NCBI RefSeq assembly: GCF_000143415.4 | Contig: NW_003314418.1 | Location: 137,891 to 154,301, forward strand | Origin: Selaginella moellendorffii | Taxonomy: Eukaryota; Plantae; Lycopodiophyta | Length of the DNA: 16,411 nt | Reading direction: 5' to 3' | Shown: one piece after another, positions 1 to 14,711 of the stretch | How the letters are laid out: each line of letters opens with the position of its first letter | How positions within the stretch are numbered: position 1 is the stretch's first letter | Made by a program: the position numbers and the translations under genes | The notes under the pieces: generated by a model | Database searches by the model: none | What the model was told of the DNA's origin: nothing | Seen by the model: the letters and a program-made list of their open reading frames with translations, nothing else

Positions 1-432
1 TCTGAAGCTCAGTGAGCTTTTCAGGTGGAGGTAGTTCTAAGTTGTCACCATAGTACTATGGGCCTTGGATTATTCTCAAACAAGTTGGAGACCTTGCCTA
101 TCAACTAGACTTGCCTAGTGGTGTGAAGATTCATCCCGTCTTCTATGTAGGGAAGTTGAAGGCATGTTTGCATTCTGGTAATATCTTGGACCAGTCTGCA
201 ATCAAGATTCCGGAGATAGATGTTTGAAGGTTGGCCCTACTTGTGTGTTATAGCAACGGCTAGCATGCACACGTCATAAGACTTGGAGAGAGTTACTTGT
301 TCAGTGGAATGGTTATTCTCCATATGATGCTACATGGGAAGCTGAGGATGACATTCCAGAGGAAGAGGAGAAGTAGTCACTTGCTCCTATCCTTTCTTTC
401 TTTTCTGACCCCATTGATGGCTGGAGGTGTTG
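1..432 (+). mobile_element. Ty3/gypsy chromovirus remnant: integrase C-terminus (GPY/F region) and chromodomain, degenerate
   Basis: Manual translation gives KLSP*YYGPWIILKQVGDLAYQLDLPSGVKIHPVFYVGKLK (stop at 51-53), then ELLVQWNGYSPYDATWEAED at ~290-349. These match the gypsy integrase GPY/F motif and the chromodomain. It runs off the window start. Confidence 0.88.
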
Positions 433-581
433 TGTCACGTGACACAGTTAGCAGTTTTGTTAGTGGGAGGCTTTGCTAGCTTCTCTCTCCTCACCTACTA
501 TTCATCATAGTTGGAGCAGAGGGAAAAATGTCACTGTATTTCGTGATGAACCAGCTGATTCTGGACCTAGGTCTCTGATTG
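433..581 (+). mobile_element. Putative short or deleted 3' LTR of the chromovirus remnant
   Basis: Begins TGTCACG just after a purine-rich tract downstream of the chromodomain. The equivalent 149 bp in the second copy (14246->14098) ends CTGATCA where zf-RVT similarity stops. This copy ends TTG, so the right boundary is uncertain. Confidence 0.4.
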
Positions 582-844
582 AAGAGCCAAATACCAACTG
601 CAAATTTGCATGTGAAGAGGTGTTCAAGCATCTCCACGGGGTTTTCATTGCATAGAATACACAGAGTTTTGTGAACTGTGAGCCAATCACCAACAGGGAT
701 GCTGTCCTGCACAAGAAGCCAGCTTACCTTAGCTTCCACCAGTGTCTTCCACATGTTCATAATGTACTTCCAATTCTTCAACCTCCACATAAGCTTGGTG
801 TCAATTTTATCCATCAAAAGCTCTTTGCGATGCTTAGACCTGTA
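582..844 (-). mobile_element. LINE (L1-like) ORF2 C-terminal zinc-binding (zf-RVT-like) remnant
   Basis: ORF 491..859 contains MWKTLVEAKVSWLLVQDSIPVGDWL..CILCNENPVEMLEHLFTCKFAVGIW, the W..kv..W...lp..CxxC..E..HLF.C.FA..W pattern of plant non-LTR retrotransposons. Confidence 0.75.
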
Positions 845-898
845 CATATAAAAAGACATACTTGGGGTGAAAGCTCAAAGTGTGTGTTTCTCAAGGAA

Positions 899-913: not shown

Positions 914-1259
914 AAGGATTATGGAGGGTTCCCAATGTATAGTAGGGATAATGGTTAGAATGTATGTCTCACCACCTGAGATATTAGTTTGGCTTCTATT
1001 GGGTTGTGTTGCTCCTTGTTTTGCGTCCAGCTTGGGGCTAAGCCCAAGCTCCATGCTGCTCTAGTCAGTGGGGTAGCTTCTTCCTCGCATTAGGTCACTG
1101 GTATGCCAAAATTGTGCTAGATTTCGTCTGACACCATTTTGCGTGTAGGTGCTGGATATGAGGAGCTGGTGCTCATGGGATTGTACTGAACCCTTATTTC
1201 ATAGCACAACGGGCTTGGAGTTTGGCTCCAAATTCAGGTGCACTACAAAGAGGAACTGC

Positions 1260-2439
1260 AAGACATGGGTGACACTGCTGCGGGGATTTGCTCACGGCGG
1301 AGAGATTGGGCGAGCGAGAGAGGTGCTGGATCAGATGCCCGAGACGAATGTGGTAGCGTGGACAATCCTCGTGCAGGGTTTCGCACAGCATGGGCGAGTG
1401 GGTGATGTGAAGGCCACGTTTGATTCCATGCCCGAGAAGAACAGCATCACTCATGCGGTGATGCTCATCATGTTTGCGGAGAATGGATTCGTGGAGGATG
1501 TCTTCCAGGAGATTGTACACCAAAACGCGATCCTCTGGGGGGCGATGCACTGCTGCTATGCCCAAAATGGGGATTTGATTCAAGCCAAGAGTTTGTTTGA
1601 TAGGATGCCTCTGCACAGCATACTTTCGTGGACGATTATGATCAAGTCATACGTGCAAAAAGGTGACGCTGATTAAGGAAAACAATTGTTTGAAGCAATG
1701 CCACACAGAGGTCTTGTTTCATGGAACTTGATAATCACTGTTTATGCCCAGAGAGGTTGTTTCAAAGAAGCTATACGAGCGTTTTCTTTGTGTTGCTGCT
1801 GGGATTCCTATTCATGGAACACAATTCTCGTGATATACGCTTTAGATGCAAATATTTGTGAGGCGAAGAAGACGTTTGATAGAATACCAACTTGGAATTT
1901 TGTCTCCTGGAACACGATGCTAGCAGCATATACCTAGACCGGCCATGCGTATTCTGCGATCCAGCTTTTGGGTGATGTTTCTTCACGGCTTTGATCCTGA
2001 TAAGGTAGCGTTTGCCATCGTTTTGACGGCGTGTAGCCATCTGGGGCTCGTCAAGGAAGCAAGCTACTTCACGGCAATGAGCTTTGACAATGGATTGGAC
2101 CATTCGCAAGACCACTACACCTGCATTGTTGATGCTCTAGGACGGCTAGGGCGATTGGAAGAGGCCGAGGATGTCCTGGAGAATATGCCTTTGCCAGCTG
2201 ATGGAGTTGCATGGGCAACGTTTCTTACCGCATGTGAAAACCACAGGGAGATGAATCAAGGGATGCATGCTGCGGAATTTACGTGCCAGTCCAGCCTTGT
2301 GAGTGATGCATTGCCTTATGTGATGCTGGAGAACATCTTCAGATTTGATGTGTTGACCCAAACATCGATTGTTGATAGCCAGCCATTCTGTGAGCCGCCC
2401 CATCCCTCATGGATGGAGAGCGGACGCACAGAGGATTGA
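1260..2439 (+). pseudogene. PLS-class PPR pseudogene (tandem 31-aa SS-like motifs, then P2-L2-S2-E), apparently 5'-truncated
   Basis: Repeats such as VVAWTILVQGFAQHGRVGDVKATFDSMPEKN; L2/S2 FAIVLTACSHLGLV..HYTCIVDALGRLGRLEEAEDVLENMP; E1 VAWATFLTAC. Interrupted by TAA (1674-1676), TAG (1935-1937) and a frameshift near 1965. No DYW domain. Confidence 0.9.
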
Positions 2440-4320: not shown

Positions 4321-5010
4321 CTAAATAGAAGACAAGTGCCTGAGGCTGTACGTATCGAAGTACAAACCAAAGAAGCAGATCAATGGATCTCCCCGCAACA
4401 CATCAATCAGCAGTCGAATGAGCCGAGCAGCACATTCTTGATCCTCTTCCAGTCGATCCACTTTCCTGTAACCAATGGTACTACCGCTGCTCACCAGGTA
4501 CCAGCCCAGCTCGCTGTCCCATGCCTCGACGTGATATTCCATGACCCTTTGTCCCATGTTTACTGGCTCTCGGATCTCCAGTACGTTGAACTTTGAGACC
4601 TTGCCAAGATCAAGCTCGATCCAGCCGGTCGACTCCCCTTGCATTGGAGCCCAGAAAGTTTCCATTCGGCCCGAACGAAGAGCTGCGAACGCTGCTTGCT
4701 GTCACGGACAAGGGATTCGCTGCTAAGTTGACGCTGAAGATGGAATCTATGGCGGAGCTAAACCGCTCCAGCGTCTGGAAGTCGGATTCGTCGATCAGTC
4801 CCGACGAGTTTGGAGGGACGTTGAGCAGGAGCAAGCAGTTCCTGGCGGATGATTTGTAGAAAACGTCGAGCAGCTGCTCCAGGGATTTTGGAGCCTCGTT
4901 CCTGTGCCAAAACCAACCAGGCCTGATGGAGATATCGCACTCCGGAGGGAGCCAGTCGGTTCCAGCACTCTCTCCAGACATCAAGTACCTGTTGATGTTG
5001 CGAATTGGAT
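4321..5010 (-). pseudogene. FUC1: Alpha-L-fucosidase (GH29, plant FUC1-like) C-terminal half, 5'-truncated and frameshifted
   Basis: DWLPPECDISIRPGWFWH..LLDVFYKSSARNCLLLLNVPPNSSGLI (ORF 4610..5290) continues after a frame change at ~4666 into METFWAP..LEIREPVNMGQRV..GSTIGYRKV (ORF 4321..4665, beta-sandwich domain). The N-terminal catalytic part is absent. Confidence 0.9.
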
Positions 5011-5014
5011 CGAC

Positions 5015-5340
5015 TCCTCCGGACGTGGCTTGGGCTCCTCCGGGCGCGGCTTGGACTCCTCCCGCTGTGGCTTCGGCTCCTCCCACTGAGGCTTGGCCTC
5101 CTCCTGGCGATGATCCATGGCCTCCTCCTCCCGGAGAAGAACCGCGGCGTCCTCCTCCTAGAGTAGAACCATGGCCTCCTCCTCCCGGGGCACCCCCTCC
5201 TCGAGCCGCCTCAGAACCATGGCCTAATCCTCCCGGGGCCAGATTCAGAGATCCGCGGCCAACCCCGGCCACCCCGCGCCCTCCTCCCACTCCATGGCCA
5301 CCTCTCCCTCCATGGGCACCTCTTCCTCCTCCTGTTGGTG
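5015..5340. repeat. GC-rich degenerate minisatellite: Gly-rich on -, WPPP/Pro-rich on +
   Basis: Recurrent (cca)tggcctcctcctcc units. Open on both strands (ORFs 4610..5290 - and 4926..5537 +). Confidence 0.8.
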
Positions 5341-6858: not shown

Positions 6859-7263
6859 TCAAAAGTAGTTGTCACAGGAACATCTGCCATCCTGGAACAC
6901 ATGAACCCGACTGGCATCTTTGCAGATGATTAGCCTTTTTTCCAGCTTAGAGATGAGAGCAGTGGCCGCATGGCAATCGTCACAAACTCGGAGATTTTTC
7001 ACGATTCTGATGGTCTCCTTCTGGTGCGAGTTCACCAGAGCACACCCCAGCGCAAGCTTCTCACTGTGGCCGCACAGGTGATCTTCCTCAGGTATGTCTT
7101 TTAGAACGTTGATCACATCGCTCGCGTACCCCTCCTCTTTCATTCTCAGCAACAATTGCTTGAGCTTGGCCGCAATCTCGTCGCTCTGTGAGTGACTCCT
7201 ATCCCCGACAGAAAAAGAATGCACTTTTCCTGAGCTAACATCCGTCCACCAGCTTCTCCCGGG
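6859..7263 (-). other. DYW deaminase domain, DYW:WW subtype
   Basis: PGRSWW begins at 7263, HSE lies at 7068-7060 and CDDC at 6984-6973. The terminal tripeptide is NYF. Confidence 0.92.
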
Positions 7264-10200
7264 CTCCCTGAAGCTGCCTTCACCTCTCATTCTCTCCACA
7301 ACAGCGGCTCTTTCACTGAGCATCCCCAGGTTTCCAAATATATTGGCCATCAATGCGTAGGGCGTGCCGCTCTTGGGATCCATCTCCACAAGACGCTCAA
7401 ACGCGAGTTTGCCGATCGTGTAATTCTTCCACTTCCGACAGGCTCCGAGCAGGGACGTCCAAACCACTGCATCCGGTTCAAAAGGCATGGCTCTGAGAAC
7501 TCTCACAGCTTCGTCGAGGAGGTTAGCTCGCCCGAGCATATCGATCAGGCACACATAATGCTCCAGACGTGGCTTGACTCCATACTGCTTGGGCATTTCA
7601 TCCAGAAGCTGCCTTCCTTTCCCGACCAGACCACCATGGCTGCAAGCGTTCAACACCGAAACAAAACTCACATCGTCAGCTTTACAGCCCTCTTCCTGAG
7701 TCATGGAATAGAAACGCTCCAAGGCCTCGATCGATCGGCCCTGGAGAGTGTAAGCCTGTATGAGAGAGTTCCAGAGACCCGTGTCGTCCCGAGCTCGGCA
7801 CTCGTCAAACGCTTCCTGAGCAGAATCAACATCGCCGCATTTGCCGTAGAAGCTCACCAGGCTGGAGCCCAGAACTGGATTGTTTTTCAGCAGCCCTTTA
7901 TGCTTCGCCAGCTGGTGAATCTCCCTCCCGAGCTTGATCGCCATCACACTCCCGCAAGCAACAAGGACGCAGGTGTAGGTGCAAGCATCAGCTTGAATGG
8001 TGTTATCAGCTCTCAGGGCAGAGTAGTACTCCAGAGCAAGTTCAGCTCGCCCGTTCGTGTTGCAGCCCTGGATGATCGCAGTGTAGGACACAACACTCCG
8101 AGTTCCCATGGAGTTGAAAATCTTGCGAGCCTCCTCAAGCTCGCCACACTTGCAGTACATGTCTACCAGGCAATTCGCCACGAACAGATCTAGCTGTTTC
8201 TTCTCCTTGCTCAGCATTGAATGGATCTCCATCCCGATGCGTAGAGCTCTCTCCCTCTTCTCGCTGGATTCGGTAGCAAGTGTGGAGCAGGCGCTGATCA
8301 CCACGACATGAGTCTGATCGTCGGGTTGAATGGTGTTATCAGCTCTCAGGGCAGAGTAGTACTCCAGAGCAAGTTCAGCTCGCCCGTTCGTGTTGCAGCC
8401 CTGGATGATTGCGGTGTAGGACACAACACTCCGAGTTCCCATGGAGTGGAAAATCTTGCGAGCCTCCTCAAGCTCGCCACACTTGCAGTACATGTCTACC
8501 AGGCAAGTAGCCACGAACAGATCTACCTGTTTCTTCTCCTTGCTCAGCATTGAATGGATCTCCATCCCAATGCGTAGAGCTCTCTCCCTCTTCTCGCTGG
8601 ATTCGGTAGCAATTCTGGAGCAGGCGCTGATCACCGCGACATGAGTCCAATCGTCGGGTTGAATGGTGTTATCAACTCTCAGGGCAGAGTAGTACTCCAG
8701 AGCAAGTTCAGCTCGCCCGTTCGTGTTGCAGCCCTGGATGATCGCGGTGTAGGACACAACACTCCGAGTTCCCATGGAGTGGAAAATCTTGCGAGCCTCC
8801 TCAAGCTCGCCACACTTGCAGTACATGTCTACCAGGCAATTCGCCATGTACAGACCTAGATGTTTCTTCTCCTTGCTCAGTACTGAATGGACTTCCATCC
8901 CGATGCGTAGAGCTCTCTCCCTCTTCTCGCTGGATTCGGTAGCAAGTGTGGAGCAGGCGCTGATCACCGCGACATGAGTCCGATCGTTGGGTTGAATGGT
9001 GGTACAAGCTCTCAGGGCAGAGTAGTACTCCAGAGCAAGTTCAGCTCGCCCGTTCGTGTTGCAGCCCTGGATGATCGCGGTGTAGGACACAACACTCCGA
9101 GTTCCCATGGAGTGGAAAATCTTGCGAGCCCCCTCAAGCTCGCCACACTTGCAGTACATGTCTACCAGGCAATTTGCCACGAACAGATCTAGCTGTTTCT
9201 TCTTCTTGCTCAGCATTGAATGGATCTCCATCCCGATGCGTAGAGCTCTCTCCCTCTTCTCGCTGGATTCGGTAGCAAGTGTGGAGCAGGCGCTGATCAC
9301 CGCGACATGAGTCCGATCGTTGGGTTGAATGGTGGTACAAGCTCTCAGGGCAGAGTAGTACTCCAGAGCAAGTTCAGCTCGCCCGTTCGTGTTGCAGCCC
9401 TGGATGATCGTGGTGTAGGACACAACACTCCGAGTTCCCATGGAGTGGAAAATCTTGCGAGCCTCCTCAAGCTCGCCACACTTGCAGTACATGTCTACCA
9501 GGCAATTCGCCACGAACAGACCTAGATGTTTCTTCTCCTTGCTCAGTACTGAATGGACTTCCATCCCGATGCGTAGAGCTCTCTCCCTCTTCTCGCTGGA
9601 TTCGGTAGCAAGTGTGGAACAGGCGCTGATCACCGCGACATGTGTCCAATCGTCGGGTTGAATGGTGTTATCAGCTCTCAGGGCAGAGTAGTACTCCAGA
9701 GCACGTTCAGCTTGCCCGTTCGAGCCACAGCCGTGGATGATCGCGTTGTAGGACACAACACTCCGAGTTCCCATGGAGTGGAAAATCTTGCGAGCCTCCT
9801 CAAGCTCGCCACACTTGCAGTACAAGTCTACCATGCAAGTCGCCACGAACAGATCTAGATGTTTCTTCTCCTTGCTCAGCATTGAATGGATCTCCATCCC
9901 GATGCGTAGAGCTCTCTCCCTCTTCTCGCTGGATTCGGTAGCAAGTCTGGAGCAGGCGCTGATCACCGCAACATGTGTCCGATCGTTGGGTTGAATGGTG
10001 GTACAAGCTCTCAGGGCAGAGTAGTACTCCAGAGCAAGTTCAGCTTGCCCGTTCGAGCCGCAGCCCTGGATGATCGCGTTGTAGGACACAACACTCCGGG
10101 TTCCCATGGAGTCGAAAATCTTGCGAGCCTTCTCAAGCTCGCCACACTTGCAGTACATATCGATCAATCCCGTCAACAAGTAGATGTTGCTTTTGTGCTC

Positions 10201-10605
10201 ATCACTCTTGAGCACAGCTTCATGGGCTTGTTTTCCCAAAGAAAGGGATCTGCTCTCAGCTGAGTCTCTCACGCGGTGTATCAGCCTCCCTAAACTCACC
10301 GGTTCCTCACCAGCTACAGCTGGGGTATGTGGAGATTTGTAGCGGGCCGTGGTGGCCTTACCTACAGCTGGGTCAGCGAGCGACTCGAGTTTTGCAGAGA
10401 CCCAGGTTGGTGTTTTCCTGTTGGCGATCCACAGGCTCTCTCCGGTAGAAACATGTTTGAAATCCGGGTAGGACTCTGAGAGGAACTTGTTTTTCTTCTT
10501 GAACCTGTTGTCCCACCAGAAAGTGGGATCCCTGAAAAACGTTTTCCACTCCATGAGATTGTTGAGAAATGACACACACCACACAAACCCTAGCGCCGCA
10601 CGCAT
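6859..10605 (-). CDS. PLS-class PPR protein with N-terminal OSB-type PDF motif and C-terminal E1-E2-DYW(WW-type) cytidine deaminase; putative C-to-U editing factor
   Basis: Uninterrupted 1248-aa ORF with about 25 PPR motifs, P2-L2-S2, E1 (VVWTSLLGAC), E2 (PYALMANIF), PG box PGRSWW, HSEKLA, KNLRVCDDCH and HVFQDGRCSCDNYF*. The start could be M1 (10605) or M18 (10554). Confidence 0.95.
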   Translation of the reverse strand: MRAALGFVWCVSFLNNLMEWKTFFRDPTFWWDNRFKKKNKFLSESYPDFKHVSTGESLWIANRKTPTWVSAKLESLADPAVGKATTARYKSPHTPAVAGEEPVSLGRLIHRVRDSAESRSLSLGKQAHEAVLKSDEHKSNIYLLTGLIDMYCKCGELEKARKIFDSMGTRSVVSYNAIIQGCGSNGQAELALEYYSALRACTTIQPNDRTHVAVISACSRLATESSEKRERALRIGMEIHSMLSKEKKHLDLFVATCMVDLYCKCGELEEARKIFHSMGTRSVVSYNAIIHGCGSNGQAERALEYYSALRADNTIQPDDWTHVAVISACSTLATESSEKRERALRIGMEVHSVLSKEKKHLGLFVANCLVDMYCKCGELEEARKIFHSMGTRSVVSYTTIIQGCNTNGRAELALEYYSALRACTTIQPNDRTHVAVISACSTLATESSEKRERALRIGMEIHSMLSKKKKQLDLFVANCLVDMYCKCGELEGARKIFHSMGTRSVVSYTAIIQGCNTNGRAELALEYYSALRACTTIQPNDRTHVAVISACSTLATESSEKRERALRIGMEVHSVLSKEKKHLGLYMANCLVDMYCKCGELEEARKIFHSMGTRSVVSYTAIIQGCNTNGRAELALEYYSALRVDNTIQPDDWTHVAVISACSRIATESSEKRERALRIGMEIHSMLSKEKKQVDLFVATCLVDMYCKCGELEEARKIFHSMGTRSVVSYTAIIQGCNTNGRAELALEYYSALRADNTIQPDDQTHVVVISACSTLATESSEKRERALRIGMEIHSMLSKEKKQLDLFVANCLVDMYCKCGELEEARKIFNSMGTRSVVSYTAIIQGCNTNGRAELALEYYSALRADNTIQADACTYTCVLVACGSVMAIKLGREIHQLAKHKGLLKNNPVLGSSLVSFYGKCGDVDSAQEAFDECRARDDTGLWNSLIQAYTLQGRSIEALERFYSMTQEEGCKADDVSFVSVLNACSHGGLVGKGRQLLDEMPKQYGVKPRLEHYVCLIDMLGRANLLDEAVRVLRAMPFEPDAVVWTSLLGACRKWKNYTIGKLAFERLVEMDPKSGTPYALMANIFGNLGMLSERAAVVERMRGEGSFREPGRSWWTDVSSGKVHSFSVGDRSHSQSDEIAAKLKQLLLRMKEEGYASDVINVLKDIPEEDHLCGHSEKLALGCALVNSHQKETIRIVKNLRVCDDCHAATALISKLEKRLIICKDASRVHVFQDGRCSCDNYF
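7993..10159 (-). repeat. Coding tandem array, 333-bp period (111 aa = S31 + P36 + long L44), about 6.5 copies
   Basis: tcgccacacttgcagtac recurs at 8141, 8474, 8807, 9140, 9473, 9806 and 10139, an exact 333-bp spacing with no indels. Confidence 0.98.
10387..10548 (-). other. PDF motif resembling that of OSB organellar ssDNA-binding proteins (aa 20-73)
   Basis: WKTFFRDPTFWWDNRFKKKN..YPDFKHVSTGESLWI..TPTWVSAKL matches the recalled OSB consensus W..ff..P..WWDNR..K.np..PDFKHK.tGeaLWl...P.WV...L. Confidence 0.88.
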
Positions 10606-11435
10606 ACCCTAGAAATCCCGATTTGTTAGTACTTAACTGTAGCAGTAAAAAGCTCGTGGTTTCTGTTTTTTCTTTTTCTAATTCTTTTCCTTTTTAAACT
10701 TTACAATGTCACAGCTTAACTGCAGCAGCTTAGATGTTTATTGTGTCTTTGATATATATAGAAAGTGAGCCAGCAGCAATCAGTTGCTCAAGAGCTGAAG
10801 AATCAGTACATGCATAATTTTCAGACAATGGGGCGACATGCCCAGAAGCCTCAGGGCACCAGTTTCATGCAGAACACTTTCGCAAATGACTCTCGCCCGG
10901 GGCCCATGCACAGGAGTCCTCGGGCGGTGGTAAAACCTCACAAGGCCTCACGTAATTATATTCACTCTGCTCCGCAACATATGTTACCACACCAAACTCT
11001 TCGCACATGAAGCCATGCACGGAGGAAAAAACCAAGCAAGGCCTCACGTGCTTACATTCAGTCCTTCTATGTGTTCTTGGCCTCACTCAGTTCATCTCCT
11101 TTGTTGTCCACCTGCGCTTCTTTACTTCATGTTTTTGCTTGCATGCTTCAATTGACATCTTCAGATTTTCAAGCGAACGATTGTGGCATACCGTGGCTAC
11201 GTTTTTCGGCAGAGCTTGGAGGTGCTGAAAGTGGCATTAAGTTCGTGGAAGATTGATCTTGATTTGGATTGTATGGATCTCTATAAATTTTGAAACTTGA
11301 GTTTATTTTTCTTCTTTTTCTTCTGTGGTTCCAATTGACTGGTGTCAAACTTGCTTTTGCAGACTATCTCTAGTACTTCTGGATGCGATCAAGGCCTGCT
11401 GCTCATTGCTTCAAAGGAGGATATGATAAGTGATC

Positions 11436-12659: not shown

Positions 12660-14097
12660 CCTTACATCAATCCGTTCACACACAATATCGAGCTAACTGC
12701 TTCACATGGATCTTCTCTTGACGTTGTGCATTGAGTGCCCCACATAGATTTGTGGACCAACTTGTTGGACGATGTGATAAGGACCTATGCAGCAAAAGCC
12801 TTGGATCCGCAACACCCGATAACTCACCAACACTTGATCTCCAACGACATATGTAGAAACTTTAGAAACTCCAGCGGGTGCAAAGTCCGGGCAAAAGTAG
12901 AGTGGAATTCAGTTATTCGGAATGTGCCACACCCAGGAATTCAATCCAAAGCTCTTCTCTTCAAAGTGATTGTGTCAGGTTTATATCCACGAAACTGAAG
13001 ATCTTGCCTAGACAGGGTGGTAACTAGAAACAAGGAATCGATTGGCACTGCTCCTCTCAACACAAAGAAGGTCCAGGATGGAATAGCAAAAGAGATGTTG
13101 AAGATATGGAAGTCACATTCCTACCCAGGTTAAGTCAGAAAGAACCAGACCATCTGACAGAGGCATTAGCTGATCGCTTGTTCTTCAACGTAGCGCATAA
13201 GAACAGTAATCAACAGTATATAGGTGACTGTTCAGCTCCAGGCTTGGGTAGAGGTCTTTGGCCTAGGTGGCATAGAAATGTGGGAGCTTCAATCAAAGAC
13301 TTATTGGATCTACAAAGAGCTAGCAAGCCATCACTTACATGTTGGGATCTTGTTTTTCTTCCTCAGCAGTGGACAAGGTATGATACAATGAAAAAGGTAA
13401 AGTCAGGTATTTGTTTAACGTCCGCTTGGAGCAAACCCTGCTCATCGGATGGCCTCATGACAACCCAGGATGAAAACTCCACATCAAAGCTTAAGGCGCT
13501 TGTGATCGTCTTCATCTTGCTTTACAAACTGAAGTTATCGAGGTTCGTGATTGGATAATGCTTGATGGTGCTGAGACTCAAATCATCTTTGTTATGGAAA
13601 CAACCCCATCACCTCAAGGTATTGTTTTGTATCCCCATAACAGTGGTGCACTGTTTCCATGTATAGTTCCCGAGGAGGTCCCAATTCCCAGGATGGCCTT
13701 CGGTAAAAGGATCAGGACAATACATCAGAGAGGGAAATACCCTGAACTGGATCCTAAAGTTCAACTGGGAGAATGCTCTGCAATACACTAGTTTGGGGAG
13801 TACCTAAATCTGATCTTATGTAGGATCCGGCTCATACAGGTCTAAGCATGGCAGAGAGCTTTTGATGGATAAAATTGACACCAGGCTTATGCGGAAGTTG
13901 AAGAATCGGAAGTACATTGTGAACATGTGGAAGACACTGGTGGAAGCTAAGGTAAGCTGGCTTCTTGTGCAGGATAGCATCCCTGTTGGTGATTGGCTCA
14001 CAGTTCACAAAACTCTGTGTATTCTATGCAATGAAAACCCCGTGGAGATGCTTGAACACCTCTTCACATGCAAATTTGCAGTTGGTATTTGGCTCTT
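12660..14097 (+). mobile_element. Degenerate LINE ORF2 3' region ending in a zf-RVT-like domain
   Basis: zf-RVT is clear at 13832-14097 (SYRSKHGRELL..MWKTLVEAKV..CILC..EHLFTCKFAVGIW). The upstream extent is tentative, based on broken same-strand ORFs and a weak post-RT-like N..L...WI..R......LW..LL pattern at ~12680-12770. Confidence 0.55.
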
Positions 14098-14711
14098 TGA
14101 TCAGAGACCTAGGTCCAGAATCAGCTGGTTCATCACGAAATACGGTGACATTTTTCCCTCTGCTCCAACTATGATGAACAGTAGCTGAGGAGAGAGAAGC
14201 TAGCAAAGCATCCCGCTAACAAAACCACTAACTGTCTCACGTGACACAACACCTCCAGCCCTCAATGGGGTCAGAAAGAAAGAAAGGATAGGAGCAAGCG
14301 ACTACTTCTCCTCTTCCTCTGGAATGTCATCCAAGTCATATTCAAAATTAGGAAACAACATCATCCTCAGCTTCCCATGTAGCATCATATGGAGAATAAC
14401 CATTCCACTGAACAAGTAACTCTCTCCAAGTCTTACGACGTGTGCATGCTAGCCGTTGCTATAACACACAAGTAGGGCCAACCTTCAAACATCTATCTCT
14501 GGAATCTTGATTGCAGACTGGTCCAAGATATTACCAGAATGCAAACATGCCTTCAACTTCCTACATAGAAGACAGGATGAATCTTCACACCACTAGGCAA
14601 GTCTAGTTGATAGGCAAGGTCTCCAACTCGTTTGAGAATAATCCAAGGCCCACAGTACTGTGGCGACATCTTAGAACTACCTCCACCTTGAAGAGCTCAC
14701 TGAGCTTCAGA
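13835..14711. repeat. Dispersed inverted repeat, copy B (pairs with 1..844)
   Basis: Direct reverse-complement alignment. Copy B carries 34 extra bp between TCATCC repeats at 14327 and 14361. Confidence 0.97.

What the first reader, a model, noticed from the sequence alone, without database searches (positions are those of the whole stretch)
10387..10548. OSB-type ssDNA-binding PDF motif fused to a PPR-DYW deaminase
Seen: aa 20-73 of the 1248-aa ORF form a complete WWDNR..PDFKH..LW..P.WV motif, in frame with the PPR array and a deaminase that keeps HxE and CxxC. Established: PDF motifs mediate ssDNA binding in OSB proteins, and typical angiosperm PLS-DYW factors have only a transit peptide before the repeats. 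Inference: this is a three-part architecture of ssDNA-binding module, sequence-reading array and cytidine deaminase. It could tether editing to nucleoids or transcription bubbles, or target C deamination to ssDNA like a natural base editor. I cannot tell whether the fusion is already catalogued in non-seed plants.
Basis: partly seen in the sequence, partly recalled or inferred. Interest (0 to 1): 0.88.

Follow-up and report, generated by a model that had tools for sequence, protein, structure and literature searches.

The report
PDF motif on PPR-DYW editing factor
A Selaginella gene for an organelle RNA-editing enzyme (PPR-DYW) really does start with the small single-stranded-DNA-binding "PDF" motif otherwise known only from plant OSB proteins, and PPR proteins with this motif also occur in mosses and ferns, apparently undescribed.

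Summary
Residues 18-77 of the intact 1248-aa ORF (window 6859..10605, minus strand; Selaginella moellendorffii) form a complete PDF motif.

- **Sequence match:** an exhaustive phmmer search gave 490 hits, and most of the top ones are SSB/OB-fold OSB proteins. A profile built only from OSB PDF motifs scores the segment at about 66 bits (E about 1e-22).
- **Structure match:** an AlphaFold model of the segment matches only the PDF motifs of Arabidopsis OSB1-4.
- **Rest of the protein:** a PLS-class PPR array, E/E+ motifs and a DYW deaminase with HxE and CxDCH intact.
- **Transcription:** RNA contigs run unbroken through the motif and stop about 30-50 nt upstream of the first ATG.
- **Not an artefact:** PDF+PLS-PPR proteins also exist in a second Selaginella family, in Sphagnum, and in Adiantum, Ceratopteris and Pteridium. 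A DYW domain was found only in this Selaginella family.
- **Literature:** no held paper links PDF motifs to PPR proteins.
- **Function is inferred only.** Most likely the PDF is a flexibly tethered accessory module that binds single-stranded nucleic acid 5' of the PPR footprint. Nucleoid tethering or DNA deamination is possible but untested.

Seven other first-reader notes report the same fusion on other pieces of this genome.

The parts
6859..10605 (-). Intact 1248-aa ORF (stop included): PDF motif, linker, PLS PPR array, E/E+ motifs, DYW deaminase
   Evidence: about 96% identical and syntenic to S. moellendorffii GL377592.1, where the same gene is an open 1029-aa frame
10555..10605 (-). Met1-Leu17 leader; uncertain whether it is translated. 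It holds an (AC)n run
   Evidence: RNA contigs of two runs carry a 2-base insertion at 10571, which breaks the Met1 frame. One paralogue model (P0154) starts at the Met18 equivalent
10375..10554 (-). PDF motif (aa 18-77); the finding's core is 10387-10548
10294..10374 (-). Linker (aa 78-104), predicted disordered
   Evidence: AF2 model of aa 18-288: pLDDT below 50 for model residues 61-82 (ORF aa 78-99); helical repeats begin at model residue 88 (ORF aa 105)
7426..10293 (-). PLS-class PPR array, including seven near-identical 111-aa P-L-S triplets
   Evidence: Pfam PPR families; P1-signature spacing of 111 aa, six times in a row
7141..7425 (-). E (E1/E2) and E+ motifs, aa 1061-1155
   Evidence: PF20431 and PF20430
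6862..7131 (-). DYW cytidine deaminase domain, aa 1159-1248, with HSE, CDDCH and CSC; the protein ends in NYF instead of DYW
   Evidence: PF14432, 94.9 bits over model positions 1-92 of 93; aligned to 9kfx, 7o4e and 7w86
10606..10657 (-). 5' UTR; the transcript 5' end lies at about 10636-10657
   Evidence: RNA contig depth falls to zero upstream of about 10657 and stays at zero to 11400

Best explanation
Shown: this is a real, transcribed Selaginella moellendorffii gene for a PLS-class PPR-E-DYW protein. At or near its N-terminus it carries one bona fide OSB-type PDF motif, joined to the PPR array by a linker of about 25 residues that is predicted to be disordered. It belongs to a subfamily of PLS PPR proteins with one to three N-terminal PDF motifs. 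That subfamily is present in mosses (Sphagnum), lycophytes and ferns, and no held paper describes it. The window's family is the only one found that still ends in a DYW deaminase. Inferred: the PLS array reads an organellar RNA and the DYW domain deaminates a C just 3' of the footprint, as in other PPR-DYW factors. The basic PDF module (net charge about +4) acts as an accessory, sequence-unspecific binder of single-stranded nucleic acid. It would sit 5' of the PPR footprint and raise affinity or residence time on the transcript. Whether its natural ligand is RNA or ssDNA is open.
For: PDF identity. Foldseek against Swiss-Prot AFDB returns only AtOSB1-4, each at its PDF motif (OSB1: rmsd 1.8 A over 59 residues, 44% identity). 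PPR/E/DYW identity and catalytic signatures. Transcription through the motif without joints, in four runs from four studies, with no coverage upstream. Recurrence of the PDF+PLS architecture: Selaginella P0101/P0152; Adiantum P0098, P0162 and P0164; Ceratopteris P0167; Pteridium P0161; Sphagnum P0168 (four species); several of these come from transcript contigs. The window PDF is sister to that of P0101 (support 100/97), and the two proteins align over their whole length. Flexible linker. PDF is the ssDNA-binding element of OSB proteins according to PMC6963530, PMC4166229 and PMC6451138.
Against: No binding or editing data exist for any PDF-PPR protein. OSB1 and OSB2 are reported to prefer ssDNA over RNA (PMC4166229), which argues against RNA as the ligand. 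The nearly invariant Lys after PDFKH is lost here and in P0101. The PDF starts at residue 2 (from Met18) or residue 19 (from Met1), leaving no obvious transit peptide, so organellar location is not shown. Two paralogues (P0153, P0002) have the first half of the motif out of frame, so the family includes decaying copies. Differences from the GL377592.1 copy are too few to test selection.
Confidence: 0.55

Rival explanations
1. One reading: the PDF binds ssDNA and tethers the editing factor to nucleoids, transcription bubbles or R-loops so that editing is co-transcriptional, or it even lets the DYW domain deaminate C in ssDNA.
For: In OSB proteins the PDF is the ssDNA-binding element and prefers ssDNA to RNA. 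The motif here keeps all invariant positions. The linker is flexible.
Against: No data. All other PDF-PPR proteins found lack a deaminase, so the module did not evolve for DNA deamination. DYW domains are known as RNA deaminases. DNA deamination in organelles would be mutagenic.
Confidence: 0.17
2. The PDF acts as a protein-protein, oligomerisation or import-related module rather than a nucleic-acid binder, for example by recruiting OSB or other nucleoid proteins, or a trans-acting DYW partner in the E-type members.
For: It lies at the extreme N-terminus in most members, 5-32 aa from Met1, where targeting or interaction signals usually sit. AtOSB2 forms tetramers (PMC6963530). Most family members lack a DYW domain and would need partners.
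Against: The only experimentally reported activity of PDF is ssDNA binding. The motif is strongly basic.
Confidence: 0.15
3. The gene is an evolutionarily young, possibly functionless copy within the very large Selaginella PPR expansion. The PDF is inherited from a functional PDF-PLS ancestor but has no role here.
For: The gene belongs to a multi-copy family with frame-shifted members. The number of triplets differs between copies. The 4 differences in the N-terminal 149 codons against GL377592.1 are all nonsynonymous. S. moellendorffii is reported to have thousands of PPR genes (PMC13386178).
Against: The 1248-aa frame is intact, all catalytic and motif residues are kept, and the gene is transcribed.
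Confidence: 0.1
4. Artefact: an unrelated OSB gene fragment lies upstream and is joined to the PPR gene only by an accidental open frame.
For: None beyond the lack of a long-read cDNA.
Against: A single RNA contig spans 10132-10636. The same architecture occurs in independent species and in transcript contigs. Homology to P0101 runs from the PDF through the linker into the array. There is no SSB/OB domain nearby.
Confidence: 0.03

Closest known systems
[quoted passage not shown] 2006, as cited in PMC6963530)
   Same: It shares the roughly 50-aa PDF motif, by sequence profile (about 66 bits) and by predicted fold (Foldseek probability 1.00 to all four, at their PDF motifs). Both are plant-specific proteins linked to organelles.
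   Different: There is no SSB-like OB-fold domain. The motif is N-terminal and single rather than C-terminal in one to several copies. It is followed by a PPR array and a deaminase. It has a 4-residue insertion and has lost the Lys after PDFKH.
Canonical PLS-E-DYW RNA editing factors (e.g. Physcomitrium PPR56/PPR65, Arabidopsis OTP86; PMC6397227, PDB 7o4e)
   Same: PLS triplets, E1/E2 and E+ motifs, and a DYW domain with PG box, HxE and CxDCH. The gene has no introns.
   Different: A PDF motif sits in front of the array in place of a recognisable transit peptide. The triplets are stretched to 111 aa and seven of them are nearly identical. The C-terminus is NYF rather than DYW.
PPR proteins with other accessory nucleic-acid-binding domains (PPR4 with RRM; pTAC3/PpPPR_107 with a SAP domain; PPR-SMR proteins; OTP51 with LAGLIDADG; list in PMC9459714)
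   Same: The principle is the same: a helical-repeat RNA reader joined to a second small nucleic-acid-binding or nucleic-acid-processing module.
   Different: PDF is not among the listed accessory domains. Those fusions are in P-class proteins, whereas this one is in the PLS (editing-type) class.
PDF-PLS(-E) proteins of Selaginella (XP_024517303.1), Sphagnum (e.g. KAH8944416.1), Adiantum (KAI5076972.1, KAI5061374.1), Ceratopteris (KAH7415344.1) and Pteridium (EP00250 P014300)
   Same: The order is the same: PDF motif(s), linker, PLS array, E motifs. In Selaginella and ferns the triplets are likewise stretched to 110-120 aa. The window's PDF is sister to that of XP_024517303.1.
   Different: They end after the E motifs with no DYW deaminase. 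Fern members can have two or three PDF motifs. All are annotated only as PPR or hypothetical proteins.

Membership tests
PDF motif (as defined in OSB proteins) | A motif of about 50 aa with the conserved Pro-Asp-Phe signature and flanking W/WWDNR and LW..P.WV positions | tested here: met
   All 8 invariant columns and most of the nearly invariant columns of a 100-motif alignment are present
PDF motif (as defined in OSB proteins) | Significant profile match to PDF motifs taken from proteins that also carry the SSB-like OB fold | tested here: met
   OSB-only HMM (180 motifs): 67.3 bits overall, E 3.8e-23; best domain 66.2 bits, E 8.6e-23. The motifs used were themselves picked by similarity to the query, which is a mild circularity.
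PDF motif (as defined in OSB proteins) | Same predicted fold as the PDF motifs of AtOSB1-4 | tested here: met
   AF2 model with pLDDT 77. The only significant Swiss-Prot AFDB hits are OSB1-4, each at its PDF motif. There is no solved structure to compare with.
PDF motif (as defined in OSB proteins) | Binds ssDNA | not testable with these tools
   Needs EMSA or anisotropy with aa 18-100
OSB protein family | SSB-like OB-fold domain N-terminal to the PDF motif(s) | tested here: not met
   No PF00436 hit in the ORF, and no match to the SSB region of an OSB protein. The protein shares the motif but is not an OSB protein.
PLS-class PPR-DYW RNA editing factor | Array of P, L and S type PPR motifs | tested here: met
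   PF13041, PF01535 and PF12854 with 9-18 matched stretches each; triplet periodicity
PLS-class PPR-DYW RNA editing factor | E1/E2 (E, E+) motifs between the array and the deaminase | tested here: met
   PF20431 at 35.8 bits and PF20430 at 25.8 bits, both above their cut-offs
PLS-class PPR-DYW RNA editing factor | DYW deaminase with PG box, HxE and CxxCH zinc site | tested here: met
   PF14432 at 94.9 bits over the full model. The alignment to 9kfx shows EPGRSW, HSEKLA and CDDCH; the terminal triplet is NYF.
PLS-class PPR-DYW RNA editing factor | N-terminal organelle transit peptide / organellar location | tested here: inconclusive
   Only 17 residues precede the PDF, and their frame is not kept in all copies. 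No targeting predictor was available.
PLS-class PPR-DYW RNA editing factor | Site-specific C-to-U editing activity | not testable with these tools
   Needs a heterologous or in planta assay

The most novel reading that the evidence does not exclude
The PDF module directs a PPR-guided DYW deaminase to single-stranded DNA at organellar nucleoids (displaced strands of transcription bubbles, R-loops or replication intermediates). Editing would then be physically coupled to transcription, or the enzyme would act on DNA as a natural, sequence-guided ssDNA cytidine deaminase. More broadly, the PDF-PLS subfamily would link organellar genome maintenance with RNA processing in non-seed plants.
Probability: 0.12. 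Interest if true: 0.9.

Novelty: new variant of a known kind. Interest (0 to 1): 0.62.

Why it matters
PPR-DYW proteins are the self-contained RNA base editors of plant organelles and are being engineered as tools. OSB proteins, through their PDF motifs, control recombination of organellar DNA. A natural fusion of the two, kept in mosses, lycophytes and ferns, has several consequences:

- It adds a new accessory domain to the PPR repertoire, and the first one found here in the PLS (editing-type) class.
- It gives a simple way to ask what a PDF motif binds when it is taken away from the OB fold.
- It makes testable whether some editing or splicing factors are anchored to nucleoids or ssDNA.
- It shows that current annotation mislabels these genes: no PDF model exists in Pfam, and gene models splice out the repeat array.

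Tried and rejected
- **Pfam:** it has no model for the N-terminal 100 aa, so a blank there means nothing.
- **Word-indexed protein search:** with the N-terminus it missed all OSB proteins and even P0101. The exhaustive phmmer search was needed.
- **Solved structures:** there is no analogue of the PDF fold (Foldseek pdb; VIA-align wide search, best Z 2.1), so the fold gives no clue to mechanism.
- **dN/dS against the GL377592.1 copy:** uninformative, with 4 nonsynonymous and 0 synonymous changes in 149 codons.
- **Original OSB1 paper (Zaegel 2006):** not held. The properties of the PDF are taken from three later papers that cite it.
- **NCBI 497-aa models:** rejected as the true product. The array they remove is an open frame, and RNA contigs continue 26 nt past the supposed splice donor. 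That is short of the tool's 31-nt bridging rule, so this point is suggestive only.
- **Single origin of all PPR-linked PDFs:** could not be decided. The tree has two PPR-linked clusters on 69 columns.
- **Seed plants, hornworts and liverworts:** whether they have PDF-PPR proteins could not be tested.

Full report
**The sequence**

The window's longest ORF lies at 6859..10605 on the minus strand and encodes 1248 aa. The finding's coordinates, 10387-10548, are aa 20-73 of it.

Pfam assigns the body of the protein to the PPR families (9-18 matched stretches each). It also finds an E motif (aa 1061-1119), an E+ motif (aa 1128-1155) and a full-length DYW deaminase (aa 1159-1247, 94.9 bits). It finds nothing in the first 100 residues. 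The DYW domain aligns end to end with a solved synthetic PPR-DYW (9kfx), with OTP86 (7o4e) and with DYW1 (7w86). It keeps the PG box, HSE and CDDCH, and the last three residues are NYF instead of DYW.

**The organism and the gene model**

The N-terminus is 96% identical to two NCBI models from Selaginella moellendorffii.

- The locus of one of them (XP_024536012.1, on GL377592.1) is syntenic with the whole window at about 96% identity.
- At that locus the gene is one open 1029-aa frame, yet the NCBI model of 497 aa removes the PPR array as an intron.
- The window copy has two more 111-aa P-L-S triplets.

**Is the N-terminal segment a PDF motif?**

Yes, on four lines of evidence.

- **Exhaustive search.** phmmer of aa 18-85 against 1.84 billion representative proteins found 490 proteins at E<=1e-3. 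Many carry several tandem matches.
- **The hits are OSB proteins.** Of the listed proteins that carry the motif (the best 150 plus cluster members), 80 also have an SSB-like OB domain. This was shown by Pfam on samples and by phmmer with the SSB region of one of them.
- **Profile match.** I built an HMM from 180 PDF motifs taken only from those SSB-domain proteins. It scores the window protein at 67.3 bits overall and 66.2 bits for the best domain (E about 1e-22 for a single comparison). In a 100-motif alignment the window sequence has every invariant residue. It differs by a 4-residue insertion and by Val for the nearly invariant Lys after PDFKH.
- **Structure match.** An AlphaFold model of aa 18-91 (pLDDT 77; helix, three short strands, helix) matches only the four Arabidopsis OSB proteins in Swiss-Prot AFDB, each at its PDF motif. 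OSB1 aligns at rmsd 1.8 A over 59 residues. No solved structure resembles the fold.

The protein has no OB fold, so it is not an OSB protein. It only shares the motif.

**Is the segment part of the transcript?**

Contigs of four RNA-type runs from four studies cover 10132-10636 without joints. Nothing lies between about 10657 and 11400, which is the pattern of a transcript rather than of contaminating DNA.

Their three base differences match the GL377592.1 allele. Two runs carry a 2-base insertion in the (AC)n run between Met1 and Met18, and one paralogue model starts at Met18. Met18 is therefore a plausible true start, which would put the PDF at residue 2. Either way there is no obvious transit peptide.

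**Is the fusion peculiar to this gene?**

No. The same search and one follow-up found PDF motifs at the N-terminus of PLS-class PPR proteins in several other lineages:

- a second Selaginella family (P0101/P0152, 910 aa);
- Adiantum capillus-veneris (two genes, one with two PDFs) and A. nelumboides;
- Ceratopteris richardii;
- Pteridium aquilinum (three PDFs, from a transcriptome);
- four Sphagnum species (a conserved protein of about 841 aa);
- several unnamed transcript contigs.

None of these has a DYW domain; they end after the E motifs. Only the window's family has one, and two of its seven copies have the first half of the PDF out of frame.

The window's PDF is sister to that of P0101 with 100/97 support. 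The two proteins align from the PDF through the linker and the array to the E motifs. The Selaginella and fern members also share stretched triplets of 110-120 aa, against the canonical 101-103. The architecture is therefore inherited, not an accident of this locus.

**Anatomy**

A second model, covering aa 18-288, shows three parts:

- the PDF as a separate small module;
- a low-confidence linker at ORF aa 78-99;
- confident helical repeats from aa 105 onwards.

**What is known**

Three papers state that the PDF is a 50-aa motif responsible for ssDNA binding in OSB proteins, that it is conserved in green plants, and that OSB1 and OSB2 prefer ssDNA to dsDNA and RNA.

Full-text searches found no paper that links the PDF motif or OSB to PPR proteins. 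A review of Physcomitrium PPR proteins lists RRM, LAGLIDADG, SMR, NYN, CBS and SAP as accessory domains, but not PDF. A 2026 kingdom-wide survey of editing factors mentions neither PDF nor OSB.

**Mechanism**

Shown: the domain order, the intact catalytic signatures, transcription, and conservation of the PDF-PLS architecture.

Inferred: the array and DYW domain act as in other editing factors. The basic, flexibly tethered PDF adds unspecific binding to single-stranded nucleic acid on the 5' side of the footprint.

They gain no specific support, because the motif is mostly found on PPR proteins without a deaminase.

**Other notes of this scan**

Seven further first-reader notes describe the same fusion on other pieces of this genome. 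That fits a multi-copy family, but they are unchecked and were not used as evidence.

Noticed in passing
window 7993-10159; L002 10001-13090: The PPR array consists of near-identical 111-aa P-L-S triplets. The window copy has two more than the GL377592.1 copy (1248 against 1029 aa). NCBI gene models (about 497 aa) remove the whole array as an intron although it is an open frame.
   Followed up: partly
P0153 and P0002 (S. moellendorffii paralogue models, scaffold GL377592.1): Both read the first half of the PDF motif in another frame, sharing the out-of-frame stretch RFSGIPLSG. P0002 also has a disrupted DYW domain. This is probably one decaying locus seen as two haplotypes.
   Followed up: partly
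window 10571 and 10579: RNA contigs of two runs have a 2-base AC insertion in the microsatellite between Met1 and Met18. Contigs of two other runs diverge upstream of 10579 into an AT-rich sequence, presumably the 5' end of another copy.
   Followed up: no
window 151-844 and 13835-14561: Inverted repeat arms, 96-99% complementary and about 13 kb apart, bracket the PPR gene. One arm holds a zf-RVT (reverse-transcriptase zinc-binding) fragment at 491..859 (minus strand).
   Followed up: no
window 1149-2439 (+) and 4610-5290 (-): PPR fragments in two short ORFs and an alpha-L-fucosidase fragment. The syntenic GL377592.1 locus continues into a Sec16-type TPR gene. This fits another scan note about a SEC16/PPR/fucosidase mosaic nearby.
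   Followed up: no
P0101, P0098, P0162-P0167 (N-termini): In most PDF-PPR proteins the PDF begins only 5-32 residues from the annotated start, leaving little room for a canonical transit peptide. The Sphagnum protein has about 110 residues upstream.
   Followed up: no
P0101, P0024, P0161, P0163-P0167 compared with P0168: PLS triplets of Selaginella and fern PDF-PPR proteins are stretched to 110-120 aa by an acidic insertion in the S motif. The Sphagnum member keeps the canonical 101 aa.
   Followed up: partly
P0033 (Coptis chinensis), P0003 (Kingdonia uniflora): Odd PDF carriers: a kinesin-motor protein with three PDF motifs, and a 1160-aa protein with 13 PDF motifs. Both may be gene-model fusions or tandem expansions.
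   Followed up: no
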